From: Pecten maximus
Lineage: Eukaryota
Direction: 5' to 3'
DNA: 64,000 bases
Assembly: GCF_902652985.1 (NCBI RefSeq)
Contig: NC_047020.1
Coordinates: 12,958,001 to 13,022,000 of the forward strand
A program made the position numbers and the translations under genes. Shown here in pieces: positions 521-58,877 of the stretch (position 1 is its first letter; each line of letters begins with the position of its first letter). The notes below the pieces were generated by a model that saw only the letters and a program-made list of their open reading frames with translations, was not told the origin of the DNA and made no database searches.

Positions 521-2281
521 TAAATGGAAATTTAGTATAGCACATTGAATACTGATTCCGTCACAGACATATTAAATAATTCATATCACAAAATAAAATC
601 GACTTTTTGTATATAGAAATAATCTCCTCATTATTCTTGTATACATACGAAATCTTTATATCATAAAAAGAACAAAATCTCTTCATTACAAAAAGAATAT
701 GATAACGAGGAAAAATATAATATCGATACATAAACCAGTTTCCAATTGACATATATATCAATATCCATTACGCTGTTAACCAAAATACTGCATTCGTAGT
801 ATTTCCACCCTTTTTTCTGAAATAATTATATATTTTCCACATCTATCTTATCTAAGATTGCTTCTATAAGAACAAAGCCCCCTTTATAACGTGTTGTCTT
901 TGTTTACTTTCCTGTCCATTCTTTTATTGTTATAGAGGTATTGTTCCAGATTCCTCCCCTCTTTTTAGATGGACAGGTTTATGATTTAGTTATTATCAAA
1001 AGGCTAAGGAAGATACTTCTTCCTGTTGGGTGGTCGGTATGACTTCCACTGTCAGTTATTATGTCATGAATTATATTTAAAACGGTTTAGACACAATGGC
1101 TCATCTTATAATAATATAAATTTCATGTAGCAAACTCACCGAATCTGTAGCAATAATCTAACATATATAATCTAAGAGAAAAAAGTTTAGATTGCATCAG
1201 TGTTCGACACGAAACCAATTTAAGTTTTTTCCCGATTCTATCAATTTATCGTTGAGTTGCTTACTCGCCGGAGAGATAACGTATACAAAAGTGAGTTACT
1301 GTTATCACCAAGTTAATTTGTGGCCTGGTGACATACACAGCCTAACGTCTTAATACACTGCTAAACACTCTAAATGTCCATTTCCATTTATCACTTTTCA
1401 AATAAGTAGTTCGTAAAGGTTTTACTAACCACTTTGCTTCAGACCTACATTTAAGAATTAATTCCTTCCGCCTATGTAAACTGTCAATCATTGCGTCATA
1501 TCCATGAGTGCCAAGAACGCGTTGTGATCGGAAGAAGTAGTGCTGCTCGACACTAAAGTAGAGAAAAAATCTTGGCATGAATGAAACCAGTGAGGATATA
1601 TCGCTCATGGTAATTACAGGAAGCAAGTTATGTAGGCAAAGACACGCGCTTTTAAAATGATATTGTTGCAATTGTCTGCCAATCCGTCCAATAAAAAAAC
1701 GGTGTATTAAGGAAAAATCACTTGATGTTATCAAGAGAAGGGAAGTCTTTCTTTAAACAGGGGTGTTTATTTTAGAAGCAGAATCCTATAACGCGGCTTT
1801 GGACTTTTCTGTTATATCTTACTAAGCAGTTAAGGTCTTATTGACATCACCAAAAGTTAAATTTTCATTAGGACGAGAACATATGTTTGAAAAAAATATC
1901 TCTTATTTAAATACATTGTATACTATTCATACTTAGTTTATTACGCTCATAGTTTAGATTTACCATTAGTAATAATAGGCATGTTAATATAGATGTAAGG
2001 GTAACTATTAGTCCTGGTATCACATCCTGTTAAATACATCATTATAGTATTAACGTCAGTAAAATATTACTGTCTGTTTTTGATTTACCATTTTACCTAA
2101 ACCGAAATGTTATGTTCTGATGCGTTTCATCTCACTAACAGAAATTTCCTGATTGATATTTATACTACACTGCTATATGGCAGTGACCGCAAATGTATTG
2201 TATTGTATGCTATATGTACTGATGGGCTGTAAAGCTCAAAGTCAATAAATGAATAGAAATGTTCTGAGTTAGGCGTTCCAT

Positions 2282-2358
2282 TTCACTTACAGAAGTGGAA
2301 TATACCTATACCATATCACTTACAGAAGTGGAATAGACCTATACCATATCACCTACAG
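2282..2358. repeat. 33-bp tandem duplication (about 2.4 units)
   Basis: TCACTTACAGAAGTGGAATA(T/G)ACCTATACCATA repeated. Confidence 0.85.
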
Positions 2359-4264
2359 ATATGACATGTTCCAAGGTCGACACATTAGTCTAAGAGTTAT
2401 AATTTCTGTTAAAGGAAATAAAGAGTGTAATCTTCTGTAGTATACTTATCGTTTCTCTAAAATAAATGTCCTGATGGATATTAGCCTGTCTATCCAGAAT
2501 TGTTGTACTCTGTGTAAGCAATTGTCCTATATTCATGTTCTTGTTTCAGGCGTAATACTTAGCTGAGTAGAAGTGGTGTGTTCAGGCTTCGTTCCAAATC
2601 ATTCGATTATCAAATATACATACAGATAAACCCCTTTAAAACATCACCTAATGCAAACATTGCATGAGCATTGATAACCTATGAATATCATTGTAATAAA
2701 ATACTGACACGCGTCATAATCTCCCGAAAATCTTAAAATTTCGGCAAGGTGTCAAATCGCGTAATTTACGCGAACTCGTCCATCTCTAGCATACCAAAAC
2801 AAAACGATAAATAAAACAAAATGAAATATCGTATTCATTCGGATATTACAATAGAGGAGATTTTTTAAAATACATGTGATCACTGATCTTTGCGCATTTG
2901 TCATTTCCACAGTAGAATTTAACACATATATGCAAATTTCAAGAGCAGTGTGTTAACATATGTTATGTCTTGACAGAGATACATAGCATTTTTTTTCTAA
3001 AATGATGTTTATGATTATGATTTGAAATTGGTTCCAGATAAGATAAATCAAGTTGGTATCTATTTGTCATATTTTAAAAGGTTTGGCATGATTTATCAGG
3101 TCTTGTAGTAATGTAATACGATGTTATCCATCTCCAAATCAAAGTTTAAACGGATGCATGTTCTCCTATACACATCCCTTTTAGAAAGAATTATTAGGGT
3201 TTTACTTTTTCTAGTTTGAATCAGTTTTAATTAAGGACATGCTCTTACATCTATGCTAGGATATCACACAGGTTTGTTCCACACTAATATACACAGATAG
3301 ATTGAAATGTCAACCGTTGACATAAACCGATATTTTCTGCCAGAAAATCACTTCCGTTTTGCAACCTCATGGGTTGCCAAGGAGAAAAAAGAGTCGAAAA
3401 TGAATTGTATGCCAGGCTGGTAGCGTATTTCACAAGCCGGCAACATTTTTGCCATTTACTCAAAGCTTGGTACGTATATATGACACATGTCATCCCTCTC
3501 GACCATGACAAGATGCTGTTACAAGCATGATGGGCGTTAGTAAGTAAGCTATACATAGAAAACATCAATCAAGATGGCGTGAATATTAGTTTTATTGCTG
3601 TAACAAACTAATTTAAAGTCATATGTGTGACAATGATACAATTATAAACCTGTATCTGGTGTTTGCCTTATATCAGACTTATCCATATCGTAGCATGTTT
3701 ATTGTTTGTAGTTATGGTAACGCTGTTATCGGTAACTGTTTTATATAATCGGTACAAATACATGTAGTTTGACATGTGTGTAAAACAGCAGGACGTAGGT
3801 TTGTTTATATTGAATACACGCAGTCCAGGCCATGACCATTGTATTCATAACCCATGAACTTCGTCGAAGTTCAAAACTACAGAAACAGGGAGTTCTGACC
3901 TCTTTATACCAGCGTAGTATAGAATGAGATTTATACAACAATTAGAAACAATGACCAGAAATAGATTCTGATTTCCTTTGTTTTAAATAATGATTTCTGT
4001 TTTTTGACGTTACAGCAATACTTCTTACAAATTAAAGAGCAAAACACCAAACCTTACCAATTTGTCTCAATTGTTCAGACGTGAAACAGTCATAGTGTTA
4101 CTGGCTTTATCTAATTAGGTGTTGTATAGACAGAGGCTTGAGCAAACCAGCACGTTTTAATATATAATAGTATATTATAGACATAAAATTATATTCTTTA
4201 TAATATTATATAAAAAGCAGATAACGAGATGTTCAATCTCAGACAAGATGATACCCGTGCAATG

Positions 4265-4735
4265 AGGTGAACCCAACTGTCTGGTCAACGAAAAATAAAG
4301 TGAGCCTTACATTCTTGTCAACGATTAGTGTATGTGAAACACATCAATAGATAGTGTATGTTAACCAAACTGTGAATATTAAATGTGAATCAGTCAATTT
4401 TAGTCAATGAATAATGAAGTGAGCCTTACATTCTAGTCAACGATTAGTGTATGTGAAAAATACCAACAAAAAGTTAATGTAAACCAAACTGTCTGTTCAG
4501 CGGATTATAAATGCGAACAAATACATTCTACTTAACGTTTATATGAAACAAACTGTCTAATAATAATGCATGCAAACCAAACTATCTAGACAATAGATAA
4601 TATAAGGAAACCTCAATGTCTAATCAAAGAAAAGTGCATGTAAAACCTGACTATCTAGTCAGCGAATGGTGAATGTGAAATTGTCTGTCTATTCAACAAA
4701 TAAGAAAGATGAAGCTCAATTAATAGTCTGCGAAT
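4265..4735. repeat. Old degenerate tandem repeat (unit about 35 bp)
   Basis: Recurrent AAACCAAACTGTCTAGTCAACGA-like blocks. GTGAGCCTTACATTCT.GTCAACGATTAGTGTATGTGAAA occurs twice. Confidence 0.6.
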
Positions 4736-7700
4736 AGTACCTTTGAGAGGTACAGTCAACACATGAATCAACAAATCCATGTTTTATCTGCATTAAGTAT
4801 TATGTCAGTGTTATCTAGAGAGGTTGCCAGGTATATGCGGTTCAGATGTACTAATTAAATAGCCAATATGATAACCGGAAATGACAAACATATCAACACA
4901 CAATCGTATAAGGAATAAACCATTCGTTACATTTTGTGCTTTCGTTGATATCAATTCTTGCATGGTGTAATTTCTATCATATTGACGAAAAGATGTATTA
5001 AATTACATCCAATATGTAAAACGAAACTAGTATTTATGATGTTTTTTTGTTTACTTATTAGTTATAGCCGAATACTTAATAATGATATCCGTTACACTTT
5101 TTTATTTCTTAAATAAAAAATCATGGATATATGGTATAAAGTGCTCTTCCATAGATAATAGAGCAAATGTTAAAAATAGTGTCTTGAGAGATATCAAATG
5201 CATTTCATGAAAGCCGCTAAGATATGGCATCTTTCACGAGTGAATTTCAAAATATAGTCACACTTGCGAAAAATATGTATTTTCTATGTATTTTCATTAT
5301 CAGCGAATTCCTCGACAGTCACCATTTTCAGACTGTTTTCTAAATCAACCTGATATAATATGTGTAATTATTATGGAGCTTTAAGATTGGTTAGTTATAT
5401 TAAGTCGTTTATGTTCTGGATTTTCATTGGTAATTGACTGTAAAATGTTATTTCTCACAAATGGAGTGTAATACATGTATTTCAACTTTTATATGTTTCA
5501 TTTTTCTGGATATTTCACTGGTGAAAGTGTGATAAAAACTTATTGCTGAATGAAAAGGTAGTTTTTGTTCTAACCTTGAACTTGTTTAAAGGTTACAGAC
5601 CCTAGGCTAACGCTATATAATTTATTGAACTATTTTCGTACTAGATCGTACACTTGTAGTGACCATATGTGAATTTATAATAGAATTTTACATTAACTCC
5701 GTAGGCAATAATTAGAGCTATTTCCTTTGTTTATGGATTTTGAACTCTATAGAGAAGAGACCTACGGCGATTTGACGGTATTGTCGAGAACTTAGACGCC
5801 ATTCCTGCAAGTTAGAAAGTACATGTTAATAAAATATCCCCATAATACGTTTATTAACGTTAGGGGCTCCCATTAGGGTGAATTAGGGATCCCCAGCTCT
5901 CCCCGATCCTACACAACCTTAGAAGAACCTACACACGCGTAATTAAGGATACGTAGGCTAACGTATTACTATGATAGCAGGAGCACTGAGCGATAATTAG
6001 ACGTTCTGATAGCAGGAACACCAATAGCAGAGCGAGTTCGGTAGGCAGGGTGTAAGCTGGTATGGCGAACATGTCGGTGAGTAAGTATCAGGAATGGTCC
6101 ATACTCAAAGAGGTGTGTAACAGATAATACTATCAAACCGGGTACGAAATCAGATTTCAATATCAATACAAATGAAATAGTTTTCCTCTCTTCTGGTCCA
6201 ATATTTTTAGATACCAAATGGCAATAATTACTTAAGTAACAATAAATTACGTATCAATCATTTATTAACAACGTTATATCACAATAATAAACAATAACGT
6301 TATTTCAGACACTCTTGAATAATATTTACAATAATACTATAATCCATGTATAAGGTTTAATATTTTTAGTTTTTCCTGGGAAATGTTAAGTTTATTTAAC
6401 GAAGAATGTTAAAGCGGCTCAAATAATGAACTGGTCAAATTAAAAAATGTAAATGGAATAAATTATATAATTATGCAGAATTTTTATAAGTTATGGTGAT
6501 TCTTTTCGGAATTTGTACAAATTTGAATAAACTTAATGGTCAACGTCCGCTTCAAAATATTCTATAGTACATTTGCAAAAACAAGGAAGACATCCGTTTC
6601 CAATATTCGATCTAAATAGCAATTAAACATGTTTAATGTTACCTGCAAAAAGTCATTTATACGTCTAACGCTACATTCTAGGCACTCGTAGCAAGCCCTC
6701 ATTGTATCCGACCACTCTGACGCCGTTACTTACAAACAAAACACCATTATCAATACTAATCAAAGCCAAATACATCGTACATTTGGTGTTCTTTAATGAA
6801 ATATTTTCAAAAAAATACCTAAAACGTAATATAAAGTATTCAAAAGCATGTACTGACAGTGGTGCCACCTATGAAAGCACTAAAGGGGACAAACCTATGC
6901 AGAAATAACTGATTGCACGTTTTTTCATATTAAAACAACTTCTGTTATTTCTGATATTAAGGATAATCCTGGTCATTAATTATATAATTAACCTGTATAT
7001 ACCTTGTATATTTTGATGTTGTTACCAAATTCACCAACAACACAGTTACTACTACCAAGTAAAATGTTTGGGATCCAATGTCATGAGACGACTTTAGTGG
7101 TACACTGAAGGTGAGAAGTCAATTCCGACTCAAGTGGGTCTGAGCGGCCGCTGTCAGTTCTCTACACCACATAAATAGCATTTTCTCATTGCTAAACCAG
7201 ATTATATAATGTGTGGCGAAGGGATTCTGTTACTTATATATACATGAAAAGTTAGCCGTTAATAAAATGCGAATGCCTTCAATTACAGCTAATTTTCCCA
7301 GGCTTATATGAAACAGCGGTAGCTGATTTTCTGATTAAACATTCATTTACATCGTCGCGAGGGAGAATTTAAATTTTGCCTATTTAAGAAGTATGGCGTG
7401 GAGATTTTATGTATATGCCTTAAAGCGATAATTGCGTCATACATTCAAAATGCCAAACTCTGATAAACTGATTTCAGAGGCTATCAAATACACATAAATA
7501 AACTACACATATCTATATTTTCAGTAGGAAACGTTTGACATTAATTTCGGGGTGACATTTCAGATGAAGTTGTTCTTAGTTTTTTCTTTAGTTGGTAACG
7601 AAATGTTACTCAACAATGTTGAGAACTAAGATTATATGTAGTTAATTAGTTAATACATTTTAAGGGAGGAATTTACATCAGGAAAGGAATTCGGTTTTAG

Positions 7701-8479
7701 ATAGAAGCCTTTAATTACGACCGTTAAAATACAGGAAATATAAATACAAAAATAACACGAATGTCTCCGCAAATTGCAATATCATTAGCAGACGTTTTGT
7801 AGACATTACTATTTGCAAAGGGCACTATTTAAGGGATATGAATTGCAGCTATAGGGTATCTCTTTAATTTCCGAAGTCTATCATACTGTACAAGTATGGG
7901 ATATTCATTTTCAAATTTAATTATCTTAGATATCAATTCAACAGCGGGATTAAGATTTTATCATATAATAAAAAAACGATTTGTTTAAAAAAAATCTATT
8001 CTAACAACAAAAGATAGAAATAGTAGGTCATTTAGTGTAGGAAACTAAACATCCACTATTTCCTTGTTCAGCTAATATCACCAAAGTTTGACCTCGGTGC
8101 ATCAGATTTTTGTGACGATGTTGTGGCGTTTTCGAAGCAAATTGGAAGTTATATATTGTTACCTATGCAATCATTAAGCTGTTGGCAGTTGCACAGCTAT
8201 GATGATATATAAACAATTTTATTCACCAACATTGAAAATTCGATTACCAGCAAAGCCACAAATGTTTAAGCTACAAGTAAGTCAATTAATTCAGTATTAT
8301 ATCATATCCAATACAGTTAGTGTGGCGCATCAAGATTTAAACCGCATTATCGATTTAGAGATTAGTGCAATCATAGATTGCCGCATCACATATTTCCTAA
8401 TATATGTAGTAGACATGTACATCTACAGCATTTTCAGTATCCTAAACATGTAAATATGTTTAACACCATGGTCTGGAAT

Positions 8480-11991: not shown

Positions 11992-13172
11992 CAGAGGCCA
12001 AAAAATGTTATACAACAGCTCAAAACAAAGCTTATATTGTAAACTTAAGTGTAGAATTACGACAACAGCAGATCATCAATACTAGAATGATAAAATATAC
12101 CACAGCCCTGTAGTGTGAGCCTAGCATATACACAATACATTTATATATTAGTATACAATAATATATAGTATATAATAAAAACATAAAGAACACATACTAT
12201 TAATGGGCACTGATGGATTAGAGTAACTAAGGACAGATAATCTCAGTTATTAGTGTTGAAAAGTGTGATCAATGTTATATTATAATATACAATGCACGTG
12301 AATCAAGAATCAAACTAGACTGTATATATTATGCAATACAACTATGAATCAAAATAAACATTTATGTTGATCCCTTTATCTGAAAAGATATCTAGATGTC
12401 TATTCATTATTTCAAACCTTTGATTGTGTTTGCCGAATCACCTATCTGTACTTCTTACCCAGCATTTGTCTGACTGGTATAAACACGAACACTCGGGTCG
12501 TTATACAGTGTATGACAGACATTCATATATACATTTGCGATGTTTTGACGAGAGTGTCCGGTAATAAGTCTCTCTGTTATTGCCCCCCTCCCCCTAGTTA
12601 TGGTCCCACTCAGCCAGAATACGTAGCTTTGGAATCCAACCCCTGCAGGTTAATAAGGAGCCTTGTTACTCAGCAGCGACTGTTGTAGACATTTCTCCAT
12701 TACGGCGCTAATATTCCCTCCGCCCAATACACGCCGCGGTACTGAAGCCTTCCACATCCTGTCTCTGACGAGACACATATATAATGTCATGTTTCTGCCG
12801 CGTATTGTTCAGAACATTGTGATTAGCGATATTACCACCTCTGTGATGAGGTTACAGACGAGATAACAAGCATTAAACAGTTTAACCCCTGTTACGGAGC
12901 ATATTGTACAGCAAACATCAAATCAATCTTCTAGGTGCCACAATCTATTAGTCCCGCATGGAAATATTTTCATTACTTTCCTCCACTGGGTTTCGTTATG
13001 CAGTTACATTTTAAGAAGGATGTTGATAAGTACATCTTAATATAATGGGTATGTAAAGGGATTAAGTTGGAGAAACAATAGGATTAAATTGTATGTTAAA
13101 TAATTATAATATAATTTAATCATATTTATTTGCAAACACAGTCTGCCAGTTTCTATATATTGAGAAGAACAT

Positions 13173-13400
13173 GGTGGTCGGGTGGCACAGCGGTAACAAA
13201 CTTGTCATTAACCTAGGCGAGTTCGATTTCCCGATCGGACGTTAAAGGTATAGGGTTACCTGCAGGACCACGTGATTTACGACAGGTGCTTCCTACAGTA
13301 AGACCCTCGCGTGCGGTTCCATCCTAACTCGCCAACAATTGTGATTTATATATGTTGATATAATTGGTTTGCAATTGTTTTAAAACAAATGAAGTTTACA
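13173..13400 (+). mobile_element. Diverged copy of the SINE family at 18560-18802
   Basis: A box TGGCACAGCGG and B box GAGTTCGATTTC. Shares blocks CCTAGGCG, AAAGGTAT.GGGT.ACCTGC, GACCACGTG and ACAGTAAGACCC.CGCG with the other copy. Confidence 0.75.
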
Positions 13401-13512
13401 TATGTACATCACGGTTTTTTACTAGATCATAACCCTTTAGGTTTGAATTCACAATTCCATTTTATCAAAATAAAATCTATTTTCTAAATTTAGGATTCAG
13501 AATCAGTCTACT

Positions 13513-13545
13513 CAGAGACTTGTATATCAGGTATATACGTCTCTG
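13513..13545 (+). mobile_element. 33-bp palindromic micro-MITE, copy 1
   Basis: CAGAGACTTGTATATCAGGTATATACGTCTCTG, with terminal inverted repeats CAGAGAC/GTCTCTG and a perfect 7-bp TSD GTCTACT (13506-13512 and 13546-13552). Confidence 0.85.
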
Positions 13546-16011
13546 GTCTACTGGAGTTAACATATCGGTTTGACTCTAGTCTTCATTTGCCCTGACTAAT
13601 GTATAATATACCATTTTAATGTTTGTGTATTGCTTTTATTTGATCTGTAGACTTAATGAGGAGTTAGTGTATTTCTACTAAATTAAGGATTTAATGTGTA
13701 TCCACTATCCGATATATGTCAGTATTAGTTTACCATTTTGTCAATCAGCGATCATACAATCTTCCCATATGTAATGGTATCACACATACTCGTGTGTCTG
13801 TCTTCTTTAAACGTAGTTTCTCGTAAAAATGTACTTCTGTTGGCAATCTGGTGTTACAGCCTAACCTTGTAACGTTTAAACGCTCCCTGGTAACTTTGTA
13901 TTTCTATCATAGCATGTGGAAATCGACAATTTCAGATAGAAACAGGAATGGTGTGACTACAGACTGGCATCCCAAAGACCCATGTAAGACGACACTTCCT
14001 TCCATTCATAAAGTAAGGTCGAAGTTGTTTCCCAGACGTATACACACTCCCAATCCAGATAAGTTGTATGTGGATACGGTTATATCATCCCATATCAAAC
14101 TGCCAAGGCATTTTTGTCTGTCTTTACAGCACTGTTAGGTAGTTAAAACTTACTATCTTACCAACTCTATGTAGAATTCTAATATCTGCTGTATTTAATG
14201 GGCCTCATAAAACCCGTCAAAATGATGGATTTGGAAATTAATAAATTGTCTTTTTTTTCTCAGATGTATAGATACAATGAAATACGCATATACATGATGC
14301 AATATATTTATTTAAAAGCAAAAAAGAACCCTCAATGTTTGAATAATCAAGGGCTGGACCGGGTGATAAATTCATTTTATAACGGTTTTGTTGACTAGAT
14401 TAGTCTACATAGCCTACGGCTCGTAACTTTCGTACTTTATTTCTTTACTTCAATAAAATCCGAATTTTACCCATTATTAGGTTCCAATAATCTCTATGCA
14501 ATCTTTCTTACTATTATCAATGCTTCACCATCATGGCGCTAAAAGACATTTATTATAGTATGATGGAGATTTGCTAGAAACTTTTATGAATTAAAAACAA
14601 AAAAAATCCTGCCATAATATTCATATTTGTTCACAAACGTCAATTTTGTCAAGTAAGCCTTCTTATCAGCCTGAATGCTGGCGCCGACGTGCTGAGTGCC
14701 AGAATTAGCGGTAGTAGTGGTGATATTTTACTTGGAGAAAAATAGTGCTTCTTATCTTTCTATCATGAAAACTCCCTCCTACAACACTTATTAAGCTTAT
14801 CTTGATTACACATAACGACCAGTAGGGTATTTGGTGTCATGTTTAAATGAACAGTTACAAAGATATGACTCTTGTAAAATCTAACCCAAGTCCGCATGAA
14901 CAAAGATTAAGATAATTAAATCATACTTGGAGAACAAAGTAGTTTATTGAATTCGTGCATTCCATGACAATTTAAATGACATTTTAAGCATCAGTGGTGA
15001 AATTCGCCGTTTTGAAGATATCATATTGATATGTTAAGGTCATTCAATCGGTAACAAAATTCCATATTGAAGATATAATATAACTTGTATGATGCTTGTT
15101 CGGTTTGGGTTCAAAAGAATAAAATGAACATCAAAGAAATATCCATGACGTTATAGAGATAGCTTTTTATCACGTGACATAGTTGAGAGAAAGTTCATAG
15201 TAAGTGCGATATACCTACTGTAACTCCTGCCAAGCGAATTTTGTACGTAAATTTGGCGGACCTATCATTTCGCAAACACTTCTTATCGCGAGCACTTTTT
15301 TCGCGAACACTTCATTACTTGAGCATTTCTTTCGCGAACACATTAAACTCTTCTGTTATTATTGAACACATTAATATGTAAAGTGGCCTGTCTGAACTCA
15401 AATAAATTGACAAAGATGTAAAAAGTAGCAAAGAATTTTCCTTTTCGGAGAGGTCTTTTCGAGCAAACATGCAGGAATACATTTTATATGTCTAGACAAG
15501 TGATGTTTTTTAAATGAACAAAACTAATCACACACAATAATTAAATACAAAGACTTGTTCTGACAATAGTGAGGTTTTCAACACCGTTGCGGTTTGATTT
15601 TGATGTGGTGTATGATCACTATGACGTCATGTCAATGAAATGTACGTCTTTTTCTTATGACGTCTTATCAGCTCGGTGTTAAATGACTCCCCAGTGAATA
15701 AAACCTTTATATATTAATTTTGTAAAAAATACAGTAATATGTCACATGATTAACACAGCATCGCACAGCTATTTAGTCTCTCTAAGATTAGTCAGTGATG
15801 ATAAAGATCAAATGAATGGAATTACAAAGAATAAACTATGAAGGTAAAAAGTCACAATATAGAAGAGAAGTGTGCTATTTCTCCTAATTATCATAACGAT
15901 TTAGTTTCTTCTCAAGGTAATGTAAGTAAATATATAATACCTTTATGATACAGATGTATACAGGTGAAATAGTCAATAATAGAAAGGTACAGTATTTTCG
16001 AAATTATCATG

Positions 16012-20164: not shown

Positions 20165-23100
20165 TTATTTCCTTGGCTCCTGTTGGTTTTGTGTATCCTC
20201 GGCTCCTGTTGGATCGATGTGTCCTCGGCTCCTGTTGGATTGATGTGTCCTCGGCTCCTGTTTGATTGATGTGTCCTCGGCTCCTGTTAGATTGATGTGT
20301 TCTCGGCTCCTGTTGGATTGATGTGTCCACGACTCCTGTTTGATTGATGTGTCCTCGGCTCCTGTTAGATTGATGTGTCCTCGGCTCCTGTTGGATTGAT
20401 GTGTCCACGGCTCCTGTTGGATTGATGTGTCCACGACTGCTGTTGGATTGATATGTCCTCAACTCCTGTTGGATTGATGTGTCCTCGCCTTCTGTTGGAT
20501 TGATGTGTCCTCGACTCCTGTTGGATTGATGTGTCCTCGCCATCTGTTGGATTGATGTGTCCTCGGCTCCTGTTGGATTGATGTGTCCTCGGCTCCTGTT
20601 GGATTGATGTGTCCGCGACTCCTGTTGGATTGATGTGTCCTCGGCCCCTGTTAGTTGATGTGTCCTCAACTCCTGTTGGATTGATGTGTCCTCGGCCCCT
20701 GTTGGATTGATGTGTCCTCGGCTCCTGTTGGATTGATGTGTCCTCGGCTCCTGTTGGATTGATGTGTCCTCGGCTCCTGTTAGTTGATGTGTCCTCAACT
20801 CCTGTTGGATTGATGTGTCCTCGGCCCCTGTTGGATTGATGTGTCCTCGGCCCCTGTTTGATTGATGTGTCCTCGGCCCCTGTTTGTTTAGTGTATCCTC
20901 GGCTCCTGTTAGTTGATGTGTCTACGGCTCCTGTTAGTTGATGTGTCCTTACTTCTTTTGTGTAATGTGTCTTCGACTACGGTAGTCCCTTGGATCCTGT
21001 TGGATTGGTGTGATCTTGACTCCTATTGGTTTGGTGTGTCCTCTATATTTCTGTTAGTTTGGTTTGGCGTTGTGTCCTATTGATTGTGTGTGTCCTTGTG
21101 TCCTGTTGATTCGGTGTGTCAATGGGTCCTGTTGGTTTTATGTATTCTTGGCTCCTGATGGTTTTGTGTGTCTTTAGCTCCTATAAGTTTGGTGTGCCCT
21201 TGTCTCCTGTGTGTCCGCTACTTGTGTTGATTTGGTGTATTATTGTGACGTGTGAGTTGAGTACGTCCCTTAATCCTGTTTTGCTCATCCTTGACTCCTG
21301 TTAGTTTTGCGCTTGGTGTATCTTCGATTACAGTCTTTTTTTATTCCTTGTTTCCTTTCGGTTAGTGTCTCCTTGGCTCCTGTTGGTTTTGTGCATCCTT
21401 TGCTCCTGTTGGTTTTGTGTATCCTTTGCTCCTGTTGGATTTGTGTGCCCTTGGCTCCAGTTGGTTTTTTGTGTCCTTGGCTCCTGTTGGTTTTGTTTGT
21501 CCTTGTCTCATGTTGGTTTTGTGTATCCTTGGCTCCTCTTGGTTTTGTGTGTCATTGTCTTCTGTTGGTTTTGTGTATCCTTGGCTCCTGTTAGCTTTGT
21601 GTATCCTTGGCTCCTGTTGGTTTTGTGTGTCATTGTCTCCTGTTGGTTTTGTGTATCCTTGGCTCCTGTTAGTTTTGTGTATCCTTTGCTCCTGTTGGTT
21701 TTGTGTATCCTTTGCTCCTGTTGGTTTTGTGTGTCATTGTCTCCTGTTGGTTTTGTGTATCCTTTGCTCCTGTTGGTTTTGTGTGTCCTTGTCTTCTGTT
21801 GGTTTTGTGTATCCTTTGCTCCTGTTGGTTTTGTGTGTCATTGTCTTCTGTTGGTTTTGTTTATCCTTGGCTCCTGTTGGTTTTGTGTATCCTTGTCTCC
21901 TGTTGGTTTTGTGTGTCCTTGGCTCCTGTTGGTTTTGTGTGTCCTTTGCAACTGTTAGTTTTGTGTATCCTAGGCTCCTGTTGGTTTTGTGTGCCCTTTG
22001 CAACTGTGAGTTTTGTGTATCCTTGTCTCCTGTTGGTTTTGTGTGTCCTTGGCTCCTGTTGGTTTTGTGTATCCTTTGCCCCTGTTGGTTTTGTGTGGCA
22101 TTGGCTCCTGTTGGTTTTGTGTATCATTGGCTTCTGTTGGTTTTGTGTGTCCCTGGCTTCTGTTGGTTTTGTGTATCCTTGGCTCCTGTTGGTTTTGTGT
22201 GTCCTTGTCTCCTGTTGGTTTTGTGTGTCCTTTGCAACTGTTAGTTTTGTGTATCCTAGGCTCCTGTTGGTTTTGTGTGCCCTTTGCAACTGTGAGTTTT
22301 GTGTATCCTTGTCTCCTGTTGGTTTTGTGTGTCCTTGGCTCCTGTTGGTTTTGTGTATCCTTTGCCCCTGTTGGTTTTGTGTGGCATTGGCTCCTGTTGG
22401 TTTGTGTATCATTGGCTTCTGTTGGTTTTGTGTGTCCCTGGCTTCTGTTGGTTTTGTGTATCCTTGGCTCCTGTTGGTTTTGTGTGTCATTGTCTCCTGT
22501 TGGTTTTGTGTATCCTTGTCTCCTGTTGGTTTTGTGTGTCCTTGGCTCCTGTTGGTTTTGTGTATCCTTTGCCCCTGTTGGTTTTGTGTGGCATTGGCTC
22601 CAGTTGGTTTTGTGTATCATTGGCTTCTGTTGGTTTTGTGTGTCCCTGGCTTCTGTTGGTTTTGTGTATCCTTGGCTCCTGTTGGTTTTGTGTGTCCTTG
22701 TCTCCTGTTGGTTTTGTGTATCCTTGTCTCCTGTTGGTTTTGTGTGTCCTTGGCTCCTGTTGGTTTTGTGTGTCCTTGGCTCCTGTTGGTTTTGGGTGTC
22801 CTTGGCTCCTGTTGGTTTTGTGTGTCCTTGGTTCCTGTTGGTTTTGTATGTCCTTGGCTCCTGTTGGTTTTGTGTGTCATTGGCTCCTGTTGGTTTTGTG
22901 TATCCTTGGCTCCTGTTGGTTTTGTGTGTCCTTGGCTCCTGTTGTTTTTTTGTGTCCTTGGCTCCTGTTGGTTTTGTGTGTCCTTGACTCCTGTTGGTTT
23001 TATGTGTCCTTGGCTCCTGTTGGTTTTGTGTGTCCTTGGCTCCTGTTGTTTTTTTGTGTCCTTGGCTCCTGTTGGTTTTGTGTGTCCTTGTCTTCTGTTG

Positions 23101-23545
23101 GTTTTGTGTATTCTTGGCTCCTGCTGGTTTTGTGTGTCATTGTCTTCTGTTGGTTTTGTGTGTCCTTGGCTTCTGTTGGTTTTGTGTGTCCTTGGCTCTT
23201 GTTGGTTTTGTGTATCCTTGGCTCCTATTGGTTTTGTGTATCCTTGGCTCCTGTTGGTTTTGTGTGTCCTTGGCTCCTGCTGGTTTTGTGTGTCCTTAGC
23301 TCCTGTTGGTTTTGTGTGTCATTGGCTCCTGTTGGTTTTATGTGTCCTTTGCCCCTGTTGTTTTTATGTGTCCTTTGCCCCTGTTGGTTTTATGTGTCCT
23401 TTGCCCCTGTTGGTTTTGTGTGTCCTTGGCTCCTGTTGGTTTTGTGTATTCTTGGCTTCTGTTGGTTTTGTGTATCCTTTGCTCCTGTTGGTTTTGTGTA
23501 TCCTTGGCTCCTGTTGGTTTTGTGTGTCCGCTGCTCCTGTTAATT
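20165..23545. repeat. 26-bp minisatellite of about 3.4 kb with two sub-arrays
   Basis: GTGTCCTCGGCTCCTGTTGGATTGAT (about 20165-20950) and GTGTCCTTGGCTCCTGTTGGTTTTGT (about 21370-23545), joined by degenerate units. Confidence 0.97.
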
Positions 23546-53263: not shown

Positions 53264-55927
53264 AGACTTTTTTGAAACATAATTTTACAAATCTTCATAA
53301 ATTTCTTACCTTTTTGAAATTTGTGTGTTCATTATTTCTGAAAATTTAATAACATTTGGTAATTCATATACATACTGATCTAGATATATTTTTCTTTCTG
53401 TATAAGGATAATTAAAATACCCTTGGTTTGATACTCACCTTCCCTGTATTGTAACCTTGGCGATTTTTCAGACAAGCGGAATGTGAAAACTAATTATGTT
53501 CATATTTATGGATTAACCGGACACCGCACGCGCATTATCTAGCGACCCATGAACAATTTCGTAACACGGAGCACGTGCTGGATTAAAAAAAGAACTATTA
53601 GAATTAATTGGCATATCGAATGATTCTTAACTTGTCACCCATTCCGCATGTGTAAAATTCATATGTTGTGCGTATTATTATAACATAAAATGTTATGCAC
53701 GATAAACAACATAAATGCAACATGCATGCGTTCTATGCACGTGAGAAGCGTCCCATGTCAATGAACATATTATGTGAATACGGTGAGTTATGGATTACAT
53801 ACATAAAGCTATTTTAGGAGGATATGCAATATGTTAACCTGAGATATGTGAGGTAACAGACATGTGTATTTGTGTTAGAGCTAATCAAATCTGACACTAG
53901 CTAACGACTACAACGTACAAAATGAGGCGACTTTTGCAGACACATTTTCCGGACCCACTGCAATCGTAAACGGTTCTGTGATTATCAAATACAAAGCGTC
54001 CAATCGGAACCCCTCGTCATTTTTGTCCTAATAATCGCTAAACGTACATTTTATGTAATTCTTCAAATTGCTCATCTTAAAGTCTTTGGCATCATTTTCG
54101 GTTAAAACAATTATTCCTACTGGCGACAGTTAATACATCGTCAATGTCCCGCTTTTAGTGGCATGTAGAGTTACACGATCATTTCGTTACCGAGAAAATA
54201 AAAACTTTACAATCAATGGAAATGAGATGTTGGAAAACATCAACGAGAAGCCGTAGTGTTGGTTTAATGATACTTCTTTGTTAGATTTGTGAGACTGTTC
54301 ACAAGTTGTTGTAACGGTACATGGTGTCGAGTTATGTCATGTTCATAATTCATTGTCTATTTTCGAGGAAGGGCGTCCATAACGTTTTTACAACTTGTGT
54401 CCAATCCTCTTGTCACGGCTTTGGCAAATAAATATGTTGAACTAAGAAAACTTTGTGCGGTAATGGAACAAAAAATTGTTTTCAAACTATATTCAATAAG
54501 AAATATTAACTTAAATTAATTAGATTTAAGCTGCAATAACAAATGAATGAACTGTCTTTACGATATGAAGATAAGTGTAGTTTTAATATTTAAACGATAT
54601 CGTTAGGGGCTTTGTTTCACGGAAAACATTTAAGACAAATTCAAAAGTCCAAATTATGACAAGATTGATATAATTATCTATCTCTAGTGACGTAGCGCCT
54701 TTGTCGGTTACGAGTGTGAGTCTGTTTTACGGCAGGTATACCTCCTGAAATCAGGTGCATCACACAGTTCTCTCACTCCCCAGTCCATACACACACAATA
54801 GCTGTCACGCCGACCTCGATACGTCCCTGATAATATGCATCTGTTTCCTGTAAAATTCGTACACTTACGCGGGGTTTCTATGTTCCTACATTTCCCTTAT
54901 CTATGAAATATACATGATATATTTCTGTAAATTCTCTTACACGATTCCGTGTCGGAATTAGAAAGAAACAATAGCCTATCGACATCGCCATCACGCTTCA
55001 AACGCGCATGCCCCGAAGACGGTGTTGATTTCATCCGAAGATCCACAAAGTCATTCGGATAACCTCGTTTGTAACCGAAGATGTTTTGTCGCCTGCGGTG
55101 CAAATAAAAATATTTGTGTCTGTTTCACTTAGCGTGCGTTTGATGAGGTACACATAAGAAGAGTATACATTGTAGATGTTATCGATAATCACAGAACCGT
55201 GGCTAATCTGATCACACCGATGGCGGCCTCTCTTTAAGATTGTATCGTTTATTGACGAACACGATGCATATCATATCATTTAATTGTTTAACCGATGCAT
55301 CAGTTTGTCAACATATACCCAATAAAAGTGAAACGTATAGATACCGCTAACTGATGTTTAACGATCGTGTAGCTTATCATTAACAATAATAACGATAGCA
55401 GGTTACACATGTTTTATTGTAGTGACTCGGGAGTGTTACAACACAATGGACCAGACTAACAAGCCTTGCTACAATAACATCGATAAAACAATGATTTTTA
55501 TATCAGAAGTTTGACTAATAAGTAAAAGTAAGAAGCCCTGGTTCCATAACATCAATAATGATTTTTATATCAGAAGTTTGACTCATAACGTCAATAAAAC
55601 TTATATTTTAGAAGTGTAACAAAGACAATTGTAGTTGTCTCTATTGTCTTTGCCTAACTTAGAAGATTCTACGTCGCTGACATCTTATACACTGCTTCTA
55701 AAAGAATGTATAAAATGGCACCCACAGAATAAAAATATATCTAATTGACAGCAACAAATAAAAGTGCCCTTATAATGATTACGTATACGACAGAAAGTAA
55801 CATGCACAACAATCAGAAAGTGCATGGTTATTTTCAGGATTAATCATTTATCCACTTTATCTAATTTAAGTTGAAGTAAAATTCGAAGCCCAAACTTCTG
55901 GAGTGAGGTAACAGTGTAATGTACATT

Positions 55928-55960
55928 CAGAGACGTATATACCTGATATACAAGTCTCTG
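55928..55960 (-). mobile_element. 33-bp palindromic micro-MITE, copy 2
   Basis: Exact reverse complement of 13513-13545, flanked by GTACATT / GTTCATT (7-bp TSD, one mismatch). Confidence 0.85.
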
Positions 55961-58877
55961 GTTCATTGTAAGTAACTTTTAGTATTGTAGAAGTATACAC
56001 TATCAGATCCTTATTTTCAATCGATCGTGATAATTCTTTTTCGGAAATTCAACCTCTTTACTGAAATAACAGTTAATACAAGGGACAAACCTCGTCTAAA
56101 CAAGTGATTATAGCGACTGAAAAACAATCAGCAGTATATTTCTGTAAGAGAATGCAAACAACAACAGTGTGGGAAGGCAGAATTGTATTAATTATAACTT
56201 TAACAGAAATATAACAAAAGTGGGTTGTTTACTTTATAGAGTGTAGCAAAAGTAGCAAGCCTTGTCTTAGTACTGAACGTTTAGTAAACCAATAGTTTAA
56301 TTCTGTCAAAACAAAGAATTAATGTGGCAAGTCAAACTTAACAGGCAACAACTTATGCAACAAGAATTTTATAAATCATCACAGTACAGTTACAAAGATA
56401 TACCTGGGTAATTAAAACAAAGAAGAGAAGAAAGCCTGTATATCAAGTCCAAAACAGAGTTATTTCCCTTGTCGTTATATTAATATTACATTGTATGTAC
56501 TGATGGCAGTATCAGGAAGTAAATTGTAACAACTATTACCGTACAAAGGGCGATAATGTACACTTGTCAGAAGTAATTTTAACTTCATTCGTTTCCCCCT
56601 ACAGTATACACTTGCAATAATTATCAGTCTATTTGATTACCCTGTTCCGTTTATTCGTTTACTCATTTATTTTAATTGCAGAGATATTTTCTTTGATTTT
56701 TGCATTCTAAGATCTAACATTGAGTTAGCATTTTATCCTGTTCTGAAATCAATACAGAGAAAAAAAAACCTGAACCCTTTTTCATATCGCTAAAACTTAA
56801 TTTGAATCATATTTGTCCGAACGTGATCACTCTGGGTGTGTTCTCGAGGCGCGGGGAGGAGACAAAGTTAGTGGAGGGCGGTTAGTACTTCTGTAAGTAA
56901 TACGTCAGTAAAGATGGGCGGGGTTGTTGGAAGGTAGGTAGGTAAAACAATAAAATAACATCGAGAAATACATGCTACACACTGAGTAATAACAGTGAGG
57001 AATGATATTACGGAAAATATACATACAGACCGCAACAGTCCGGAGTATAAACTTACGGCGAAACGCAGATGAAAGAAACAGGCCAATTATTGAGACGGAG
57101 GGGGAGGTCTTTGTGTATGTCACTATCCGTCCCGACCCCCACGGGGGCTGATAGCGACACACAGGGGTCAGGGTGATAGCGACCTCTCCCCCCAGTAGGA
57201 CCGCCCTTGAAAATATATCCACCGTCAGATAGGGTTATGCCACCCACGGCGGCTCGCCCATTGTGGACACACGTGGTCAGTGAGCGTACAGGGCACGTGC
57301 CTCTATGACGGTACATACACGTGTATTTCGTTCCTAATTTCACGACATTAACCCCAGTAAACAAAAAATCTCATTTGAGGCGTACACGTGCATTAGTGCA
57401 TGAACGTGCATTATTAAAACACATAAGTCAGTTTTGTATTTAGGGAACGTTAGAAGACATAGTCCCCTTCTGTGAACAGAAACTGCCCAGTGGTCAAGTA
57501 ACTTTAAACCCAAGTTTATTGAGGCATAAAATCGGCCAGAGTCGATGGTTGTGGTTGGTCTATTAGTAACGATTTACATCAATTAACAGCTGATTGATCC
57601 ACAGGTCGTATGTCCAGTCATACAGAGGCACTATTGTAGTCTCCAGCAACAGGGATTGAAATCAAACTTTGTGGCTTAATTTAGCCTATTTTAGTGGACG
57701 AGGAGCCAATTTTTGCGTGAAAAATCTGCCTCCTCGACTAAAGCTTGAACGATATTTTGGTGGTTCTGAATCCTTTAGACATTTCTGCATCGTCTGTACC
57801 CGCTCTCTGGCGTGTGTGATAAAGATCGAGGAAAATCCAGTACGTAATGTCCTTGGCGAGTTCTCACCTGACAAAGGGTAGTGACTCTTATTTAAATGTA
57901 AACAAACAAACAAATATTAAAAAGGACTACCGAAAGCTAGTAAACATATGTTCTCGTGTTCCGACAATAGATCTAGGTAAATATTTACATACATACATAC
58001 GTAAGATGACAATAACTCGCTGTCGGCCATACATGGAGCCTTTACACCACAAAACGCCCTTATCATAACCGACCGATTGCGATCTCGATCCGATTTGTTT
58101 ACATTTAATTTTTTCGCTTCCGGCTTATAGTTGTTCTTGCCAGAAACATGGGAAAACATACGTTTTTATATAGCAGTGTTTTTATGTACATTGTATATGT
58201 CAGTAGTAAGAATATTGGGGACACTAACCAACATAAAATTTCTAATATCTTCTTATTTAGTTAATTTCTGGATGTGATCTTTCTATATGGTTTTATTTAC
58301 TTGAAGGCCTCTTATTCCCTTGAATGAGTTAAGAAGGACTGAAGTTGTTTGGATTTATGTAGACATGCTTCGGCAAAATAACTATCGTTCAATAATCTTT
58401 TGCCACGCATGTAAACATGATGGTGAATGGAGGCAGTTGTTTGTGTTCCTTCTTTAAGGCCGAGAAATTGAATGGACAGAAAAATATAAGAGGGCAAATA
58501 TTCTAACTTGAAAATGACAAATCGATCGCAAAAATACTAACAAAACATTCAATGCTTGGAGACTGTTGATAAAGCACTAGGAAATATAAGACCAGGCGTT
58601 CCTTGAGGGTAGGCGTATCTTCTGCTTCATCGACAACACTTCATAGTAACCCCTCTTTCACTTTGTTGAAGTTGAACCTTTCACGGCGTCCAGTATCGGT
58701 ACGATATGAAGAGTTCCTCTTTAGAAAGAGCGAAGGTAACATTTGGGCATTGTGGCCTGTACTACTGAAAGGATGCTCAGAACAGAAGGAACTATTTTAC
58801 TATATACATGTCAATCAAACAAATGTATCATTTACCTCGGCACAACACGACTTTACTCCGAATAAACTTATCGATAA

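What the first reader, a model, noticed from the sequence alone, without database searches (positions are those of the whole stretch)
13506..13552. A 33-bp micro-transposon present twice, 42 kb apart, each copy with its own 7-bp TSD
Seen: CAGAGACTTGTATATCAGGTATATACGTCTCTG at 13513-13545 and its exact reverse complement at 55928-55960. The flanks are unrelated, and each copy sits between 7-bp direct repeats (GTCTACT/GTCTACT and GTACATT/GTTCATT). Known: CA..TG termini and 7-bp GT-starting TSDs characterise the Galileo branch of the P-element superfamily. Inference: this is a minimal mobilisable unit made essentially of two fused TIR tips, far smaller than typical MITEs and likely missed by repeat pipelines. 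Two identical copies in 64 kb suggest a large, recent family. An alternative is a stereotyped internal-deletion or abortive-repair product of a longer element.
Basis: partly seen in the sequence, partly recalled or inferred. Interest (0 to 1): 0.8.

Follow-up and report, generated by a model that had tools for sequence, protein, structure and literature searches.

The report
Scars left by jumping P-type transposons
The 33-base palindrome found twice in this king-scallop window is most likely not a tiny transposon but the scar left when a longer P-type cut-and-paste transposon jumped out, one of about 2,700 such scars in the genome, which together suggest that the enzyme cuts about 19 bases inside each transposon end.

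Summary
The 33-mer lies at 13513-13545 (+) and 55928-55960 (-), with 7-bp duplications matching 7/7 and 6/7.

Genome-wide (Pecten maximus assembly) it has 223 near-copies, 97 of them exact. Of 32 copies inspected, 25 have perfect 7-bp TSDs.

It is not a self-mobilising micro-transposon. It equals the first 19 and last 19 nt of a 1.9-10 kb non-autonomous element family, overlapped by 5 nt (TCAGG against TCTGG, mismatch at position 17).

Among 223 elements with these tips, only 97 carry this junction. The rest vary at the centre in length, filler and the base at position 17.

I found a 10.3-kb relative with the same tips, a 7-bp TSD and an ORF holding all three P-transposase domains. Its scars keep at most 19 nt per end, with one ambiguous 20.

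TSDs fit GTWNWAC, like Galileo. About 2,700 such scars exist.

Best reading: excision footprints of P-superfamily elements joined by end joining.

Copy 1 is present in three independent samples, and no empty allele was seen.

Earlier reports of this scan reached the same reading on other DNA of this genome.

The parts
13506..13512 (.). Left copy of the 7-bp target-site duplication of scar 1 (GTCTACT)
   Evidence: It is identical to 13546-13552.
13513..13545 (+). Scar 1. The 33-bp excision footprint is left-end nt 1-19 (13513-13531) plus right-end nt 19-1 (13527-13545), overlapping by 5 nt (13527-13531). The mismatch position 17 is at 13529.
13546..13552. Right copy of the 7-bp TSD of scar 1 (GTCTACT)
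55921..55927 (.). TSD copy of scar 2 (GTACATT)
   Evidence: It matches 55961-55967 at 6 of 7 positions.
55928..55960 (-). Scar 2. The same 33-bp footprint in the opposite orientation. The left-end tip starts at 55960, and position 17 is at 55944.
55961..55967 (.). TSD copy of scar 2 (GTTCATT)

Best explanation
Each 33-mer is an excision footprint. A non-autonomous P-superfamily element inserted at the site and made a 7-bp duplication. This element is 1.9-10 kb long, with left end CAGAGACTTGTATATCAGGGAGAC... and right end ...CTCTGGTATATACGTCTCTG. A P-type transposase supplied in trans later cut it out. The cut is staggered, so about 19 nt of each transposon end stay on the flanking DNA as 3' single strands. 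In this family the last five bases of the two tails can pair (TCAGG against TCTGG, one mismatch at position 17). End joining therefore gives 19+19-5 = 33 bp again and again.

Shown here: the source family, the shared 7-bp TSDs, the transposase-bearing relative with the same tips, the junction spectrum and the 19-nt ceiling. Inferred: the strand chemistry, the 5-nt annealing step, and which transposase copy acted.
For: (1) Source elements. Long copies carry exactly these tips, with perfect 7-bp TSDs in 8 of the 10 copies where both ends were found, plus element B. The left arm has 173 candidate copies and the right arm 197.

(2) Junction diversity. Of 223 elements with perfect 13+13-nt tips (control 0), only 97 carry the 33-mer junction. 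By my hand count of the first 100 listed there are 46 exact copies, which is 39 of 92 after collapsing two tandem arrays. There are also 7 with T, 3 with G and 1 with C at position 17. The rest are length variants of 26-47 bp, some with templated fillers.

(3) Ceiling. Measured against a 25-bp perfect TIR, 18 palindromic scars keep at most 19 nt in 13 cases, 17 nt in 4 and 20 nt in 1. The modal class is 19+19 = 38 bp.

(4) P link. Element C4:52489941-52500252 is 10,312 bp long. It has the same tips, the TSD AACTAGG, and a 973-aa ORF with TNP-like RNaseH_N, GTP-binding and RNaseH_C domains, all above their cut-offs. Its only PDB match is the Drosophila P transposase. Its left arm is 73-74% identical over about 720 bp to the left arm of the non-autonomous family.

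(5) Target. The TSD consensus from 69 sites is GTWNWAC, against Galileo's GTANTAC (PMC4168063 passages).

(6) Generality. There are 2,843 CAGAGAC..GTCTCTG units of 26-56 bp against 142 for the control. In an unselected set of 50, the TSD is 7/7 in 31 and 6/7 in 9.

(7) Literature. P transposase makes a 17-nt staggered cut, and the donor break is repaired by NHEJ or HR (PMC7776569 passages).
Against: No site was found where one haplotype or paralog holds the long element and another holds the scar with the same TSD. Excision at a given locus is therefore inferred and not seen.

The transposase-bearing element has T-type tips at both ends. The source family of the 33-mer has a different right tip beyond the first 7 nt, so cross-mobilisation is assumed.

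The A:T ratio at position 17 is 39:7, not the 1:1 that simple segregation of a heteroduplex would give.

A point variant (G at position 17) recurs at 3 independent loci, which copying of a variant master would also explain.

Two of 92 junctions keep more than 19 nt on one side (22 and about 21; hand reading).

My sample of this family is biased, because 30 loci were fetched as exact 33-mers.

No THAP domain was detected in the 973-aa ORF at E<=0.001.
Confidence: 0.85

Rival explanations
1. Micro-MITE. The 33-bp unit is itself mobilised in trans by a P-type transposase and amplified from a master copy. Each copy would make its own 7-bp TSD on insertion.
For: There are 97 exact copies and 223 near-copies, almost all with their own TSD. 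The variant with G at position 17 lies at 3 independent loci with different flanks.
Against: Variation is concentrated at the centre. 126 of 223 elements with perfect tips differ there, mostly in length. That is several times the decay seen in the 26 tip positions (my estimate).

The same architecture, with many junctions, occurs in every tip family.

Retention per side stops at 19 nt. That is a property of cleavage, not of a replicating unit.

The one rare junction seen twice sits in a 364-bp tandem duplication with identical flanks.

Drosophila P needs at least 138 bp at one end and 216 bp at the other for transposition and excision (PMC1562414 passage). A 33-bp duplex also cannot loop to pair its own ends (established DNA stiffness; inference).
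Confidence: 0.06
2. In-situ internal deletion without excision. Replication slippage, hairpin processing or aborted synthesis-dependent gap repair would remove the interior of a resident long element and leave only its tips.
For: A few units keep more than 19 nt of one end. One is 22 nt. The 53-bp derivative of the unrelated 10.9-kb P element keeps 18 plus at least 29 nt. The long family holds internal tandem repeats that favour slippage.
Against: Slippage or aborted copying should give a continuum of breakpoints. Observed breakpoints instead stack at 16-19 nt from each end, and there is a hard ceiling at 19 within a 25-bp perfect TIR. The interior of the left/right family is not palindromic, so hairpin deletion does not apply.
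Confidence: 0.07
3. Chance palindromes, or a functional host motif unrelated to transposons.
For: None beyond the palindromic form.
Against: Controls give 0 of 223, 0 of 223 and 142 of 2,843. Each copy has its own 7-bp TSD. The tips are identical to the ends of long elements.
Confidence: 0.01

Closest known systems
Excision footprints of the Drosophila P element (17-nt staggered cleavage, end joining)
   Same: Both TSD copies are kept. A remnant of each inverted-repeat tip lies between them. The remnant length is bounded by the stagger. Junctions vary by microhomology and filler. The transposase carries the same three TNP-like domains (PMC7776569 passages).
   Different: The ceiling here is 19 nt, not 17. 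The TSD is 7 bp, not 8. The scars are natural, germ-line and number in the thousands in a mollusc genome, not laboratory revertants. That laboratory P footprints retain up to about 17 nt per side is recalled by me, not read in a call.
Galileo / 1360 branch of the P superfamily (Drosophila)
   Same: A 7-bp TSD with a palindromic GT...AC consensus. Galileo is GTANTAC or GTATTAC in PMC4168063, and GTWNWAC here. Non-autonomous copies with internal repeats are abundant.
   Different: No kb-long foldback TIRs here. The perfect TIR is 25 bp. I did not test phylogenetic placement of the transposase, so 'Galileo branch' is a resemblance and not a shown membership.
P-MITEs (Anopheles gambiae P-MITEs; BuT5 of Drosophila repleta group)
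   Same: Non-autonomous derivatives that share tips and TSD length with a P master (PMC1562414 passages; PMC3698922 abstract only). The 1.9-kb basic unit of the source family (L062) fits this kind.
   Different: P-MITEs keep tens to about 100 bp of each end and amplify. The 33-mer keeps 19 nt per end and shows a repair-junction spectrum instead of a master-copy pattern.
Tandem-repeat-containing MITE-like elements of bivalves (pearl, DTC84)
   Same: They occur in bivalves and have internal tandem repeats, as the source family does.
   Different: Those have an AA 'TSD' and are thought Helitron-like (PMC3879986 passages). The family here makes 7-bp TSDs and has P-type tips, so it is not a member.

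Membership tests
P superfamily DNA transposon (source elements) | Transposase with a split RNase H fold interrupted by a GTP-binding insertion domain | tested here: met
   The 973-aa ORF L136:3714-6632(-) lies inside the element with the same tips. It scores 78.6 bits on PF21787, 71 bits on PF21788 and 28.6 bits on PF21789, all above cut-off. Its only PDB hit is 6p5a, the P transposase, at E 8e-12.
P superfamily DNA transposon (source elements) | 7- or 8-bp target-site duplication | tested here: met
   The autonomous candidate has AACTAGG on both sides. Long non-autonomous copies have perfect TSDs in 8 of 10 with both ends found, plus element B. The unrelated 10.9-kb P element also has 7-bp TSDs, GTCAGTG and GCCTAGC.
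P superfamily DNA transposon (source elements) | Palindromic target preference (GTANTAC in Galileo) | tested here: met
   Symmetrised logo of 69 perfect-TSD sites: G .41, T .72, W, N, W, A .72, C .41, against a background of G/C .18 and A/T .32. Compared with PMC4168063.
P superfamily DNA transposon (source elements) | Unusually long staggered cleavage inside the TIR (17 nt in Drosophila) | tested here: met
   The test is indirect. Retained tip length is capped at 19 nt in 17 of 18 palindromic scars, with one at 20, although the TIR is perfect for 25 nt. This is not a biochemical mapping.
P superfamily DNA transposon (source elements) | N-terminal THAP DNA-binding domain | tested here: inconclusive
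   There is no THAP hit at E<=0.001 in the stop-to-stop ORF. Upstream exons were not modelled.
Transposase excision footprint | Both TSD copies kept, with remnants of both element ends between them, and source elements with the same ends present in the genome | tested here: met
Transposase excision footprint | Junction heterogeneity (microhomology, deletions, templated fillers) at the centre with conserved tips | tested here: met
   (223 sites, 97 with the modal junction).
Transposase excision footprint | Same site seen occupied by the full element in another haplotype, paralog or species | tested here: not met
   Contigs of four runs showed only the scar allele at copy 1 and no joint. Stored loci gave no informative paralog. 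Contigs cannot show absence, so this is 'not found' and not 'excluded'.
   The spectrum is dominated by junction variation at the centre. The rare 37-mer seen twice is a local tandem duplication. The G-17 variant at 3 loci remains compatible with either reading.
   Drosophila P needs 138 bp at one end and 216 bp at the other (PMC1562414 passage). The requirement of the scallop enzyme is unknown.

The most novel reading that the evidence does not exclude
A subset of the exact 33-mers is not a primary scar but was re-mobilised. Because a scar keeps the 19 nt of each end that a P-type transposase holds at cleavage, the enzyme might still cut and paste it, or pair two nearby scars as the ends of a larger unit. 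That would make it the smallest eukaryotic mobile unit. It could also explain recurrent point variants such as G at position 17 at three loci, and the local clusters of scars.
Probability: 0.05. Interest if true: 0.8.

Novelty: new member of a known kind. Interest (0 to 1): 0.42.

Why it matters
Cut-and-paste transposons normally leave scars too small to recognise, so their excision history is invisible. Here the long stagger of a P-type enzyme leaves scars of 26-50 bp. That gives roughly 2,700 dated, mappable excision events in a wild mollusc genome.

From sequence alone the scars give three things. The first is the cleavage offset of a non-model P transposase, about 19 nt against 17 in Drosophila. 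The second is its target motif. The third is the germ-line end-joining spectrum of a bivalve: microhomology use, templated fillers and the fate of a defined mismatch.

The scars also warn annotators that such 'micro-MITEs' are repair products.

The kind of event is textbook, and this scan has already reported it elsewhere in the same genome. The value is therefore incremental: the source family of this particular 33-mer, a transposase-bearing relative, and the 19+19-5 arithmetic.

Tried and rejected
The Pfam family PF12017 gave no hit in the genome, and its controls also rang nowhere. I replaced it with PF21787, which gave 44 hits.

ORFs inside long copies of the source family are nested LINE reverse transcriptase or endonuclease, or have no family. 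tblastn with two P-like ORFs found nothing in these copies. The family is therefore non-autonomous.

Four other P-like loci do not carry CAGAGAC tips: L064, L065, L135 and L137. L065 belongs to a separate 10.9-kb P element with CACAGG... tips and 7-bp TSDs. I found only one micro-derivative of it.

A search for paralogous empty sites among stored loci returned only tandem-array artefacts.

ORFs near both window copies gave no credible Pfam family, so I could not test a link to promoters here.

The pearl/DTC84 type of bivalve MITE was rejected, because it has an AA TSD.

Papers: four searches listed no paper describing natural genome-wide P-type footprints. I read passages only of PMC7776569, PMC10983969, PMC4168063, PMC3879986, PMC10294476, PMC7191990 and PMC1562414. 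Supplements were not opened. The Galileo TSD tables in the supplements of PMC4168063 might refine the target comparison.

The counts of junction classes are my hand count of the 100 rows shown. The other 123 rows were not listed.

Full report
**Observation.** The 33-mer CAGAGACTTGTATATCAGGTATATACGTCTCTG is at window 13513-13545 on the + strand. Its exact reverse complement is at 55928-55960. None of 100 shuffles gave a match. Copy 1 lies between GTCTACT and GTCTACT. Copy 2 lies between GTACATT and GTTCATT. No other CAGAGAC...GTCTCTG pair of up to 5 kb exists in the window, and the window has no N.

**Genome.** G000 has 918,306,378 bp in 3,983 contigs, and its longest contig is 60,076,705 bp. 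These three figures equal those printed for the Pecten maximus assembly in PMC7191990 (passages). The window is C6:12958001-13022000.

**Census of the 33-mer.** At <=2 mismatches there are 223 matches (108 + 115), against 0 for the reversed control. 97 rows are exact. Among 32 distinct copies (30 loci plus the two in the window), the 7-bp flanks match 7/7 in 25, 6/7 in 5 and less in 2. One of the last two lies inside a tandem array. TSD sequences differ from copy to copy. Two pairs of loci share flanks (L001/L004 and L014/L015) and are duplicated loci.

**The tips belong to long elements.**
- The left 16-mer occurs 856 times and the right 16-mer 278 times, far more often than the 33-mer.
- Pairs of hits 9-10 kb apart led to elements of 10,485 and 9,379 bp. 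They start CAGAGACTTGTATATCAGGGAGACTGG and end CTCTGGTATATACGTCTCTG. The second has a perfect TSD, GTTCACA.
- The first 340 bp has 173 candidate copies and the last 400 bp has 197. Forty of each were scored, at 81-100% identity.
- I fetched 13 further copies. Both ends were found in 10, and 8 of those have perfect 7-bp TSDs.
- The basic unit is about 1.9 kb (L062), with internal repeats of about 210 bp. Larger copies hold more repeats or nested LINEs.
- No transposase remnant is present. This is a non-autonomous family.

**How the 33-mer is built.** The 33-mer is left-end nt 1-19 followed by right-end nt 16-1, sharing GG. Equivalently, it is 19 nt of each end overlapped by 5 nt: TCAGG from the left and TCTGG from the right. 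The single mismatch falls at position 17, so 14+5+14 = 33 (ends; the arithmetic is mine).

**The junction is the variable part.**
- Requiring only 13 exact nt at each tip gives 223 sites, with control 0. 97 of them have the 33-mer junction.
- In my hand count of the 100 rows shown, 46 are the exact 33-mer. That is 39 of 92 after collapsing a 7-unit array on C6 and a pair on C3.
- At position 17, seven have T, three have G and one has C.
- Three are 34-mers with one more G. Pairs of 35-, 29- and 26-mers occur.
- The rest are single variants of 26-47 bp. Several have fillers copied from adjacent sequence.
- Other 'single' left-tip hits are again tiny units with one side cut back to 7-11 nt.
- Palindromic units built from two left-type tips range from 33 to 44 bp, all with TSDs.
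- The one rare junction seen twice lies in a 364-bp tandem duplication with identical flanks.
- The G-17 variant is at three loci with different flanks.

**A general phenomenon in this genome.** The pattern CAGAGAC-N(12-42)-GTCTCTG has 2,843 sites, against 142 for the control. I took the first 50 sites on C1, which are unselected. They belong to several tip families (CAGAGAC followed by A, C, G or T and a TATAT motif). They measure 26-50 bp and have many different junctions. The TSD is 7/7 in 31 and 6/7 in 9. The three sequences that look like chance matches score 0-2 of 7.

**Link to a P-type transposase.**
- PF21787 has 44 hits in the genome.
- One hit, at C4:52495634, lies 2.6 kb from a left end that is 73-74% identical over about 720 bp to the left arm of the non-autonomous family.
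- Copies on C13 and C1296 lose similarity to the C4 copy exactly at a second CAGAGACTTGTATATCACAGAGACT tip.
- The C4 element runs from 52489941 to 52500252, which is 10,312 bp. It has a 25-bp perfect TIR and AACTAGG on both sides.
- Its 973-aa ORF carries TNP-like RNaseH_N, the GTP-binding insertion domain and RNaseH_C, all above their cut-offs. Its only match among solved structures is the Drosophila P transposase, at E 8e-12.
- Other copies are 94-98% identical.
- A second, unrelated P-type element of 10.9 kb, with tips CACAGGTCC, also makes 7-bp TSDs. It has one 53-bp derivative.

**Retained length.** I measured 18 palindromic scars in my stored loci against the 25-bp TIR. The longer side is 19 nt in 13, 17 nt in 4 and 20 nt in 1. 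The modal class is 19+19 = 38 bp with no overlap. For the left/right family, the left side is 19 nt in 31 of 41. That sample is biased, because 30 loci were fetched as exact 33-mers. Drosophila P transposase cuts 17 nt inside each end and leaves 3' single strands. The donor break is repaired by NHEJ or HR (PMC7776569 passages; PMC10983969 passage). The scallop scars point to the same geometry, with an offset of about 19 nt.

**Target.** Sixty-nine distinct perfect-TSD sites give a symmetrised consensus of GTWNWAC, with T at -3 and A at +3. Galileo TSDs are 7 bp with consensus GTANTAC or GTATTAC (PMC4168063 passages).

**Population check.** Contigs of four runs from four samples and four studies were laid on 12800-14300.
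- The left junction is bridged in X1 and X2, and the right junction in X2 and X4.
- No joint skips the 33-mer.
- Loose ends pile up exactly at 13512/13513 and 13545-13547, as expected for a dispersed repeat with these borders.
- X1 may be the assembly's own sample.
- Contigs cannot show absence, so an empty or occupied allele at low frequency is not excluded.

**Reading.** The data fit excision footprints of P-superfamily elements. The stereotyped 33-mer is the product of two 19-nt tails that pair over 5 nt. Variation at position 17 is what an unrepaired A.A mismatch would give, although the 39:7 bias is unexplained.

A self-mobilising 33-bp unit is disfavoured for three reasons. The first is the junction spectrum. 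The second is the 19-nt ceiling. The third is the cis requirements known for Drosophila P, at least 138 and 216 bp (PMC1562414 passage).

In-situ deletion is a minor rival. What is missing is a site seen both occupied and scarred.

**Earlier work of this scan.** Before I looked, I had recorded the same reading. Follow-up reports s1-792030, s1-802597 and s1-786403 read similar palindromes elsewhere in this genome as P-type scars keeping 17-18 nt. They are not independent support. s1-789112 described an 11-kb two-gene P element. That led me to check the ends of L065.

**Verdict.** This is a new member of a known kind, of moderate interest.

Noticed in passing
window 20170-23541: A 3.4-kb minisatellite of about 130 copies of a 26-bp G/T-rich unit, 82% matching. 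It explains the extreme AT skew of that bin.
   Followed up: partly
L022 (G000:C3:42457586-42460618), about C3:42458800-42459200: At least 10 scars of the 33-mer type stand head to tail. They are separated by GGTATTC (the TSD) or by longer spacers, with (TA)n expansions inside the scars. All share the same junction. This looks like a scar-plus-TSD unit turned into a minisatellite by slippage, and not like serial excisions.
   Followed up: partly
L045 (G000:C6:46604200-46605100): A tandem array with a 65-bp period, in which each unit holds one 33-mer plus 32 bp of flank. At least 8 units are present.
   Followed up: no
L106+L065+L107 (G000:C1:29543249-29554172): A young 10.9-kb P-type element. 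It has long TIRs starting CACAGGTCCTAGCC, 7-bp TSDs and a 793-aa P-like ORF, plus a 621-aa ORF on the other strand. Copies on C1, C11, C2, C4, C35 and C17 are 99-100% identical.
   Followed up: partly
L137 (G000:C6:47237500-47247400), 2146-5029 and 5237-8120: A perfect (100%) inverted duplication of 2,884 bp with a 207-bp spacer. Each arm carries part of a P-like ORF of 711 or 807 aa. It could be a foldback arrangement or an assembly artefact.
   Followed up: no
L046 (G000:C1:3192900-3196100) and L049 (G000:C2:28807500-28808700): Local clusters of scars from different tip families: five in 3.2 kb and four in 1.2 kb. This suggests insertion hot spots. I did not check gene context.
   Followed up: no
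L139 (G000:C13:10314835-10317334), 718-741: A 24-bp scar of another tip family with a perfect TSD, GTGTATG. It lies about 700 bp outside a copy of the transposase-bearing element.
   Followed up: no
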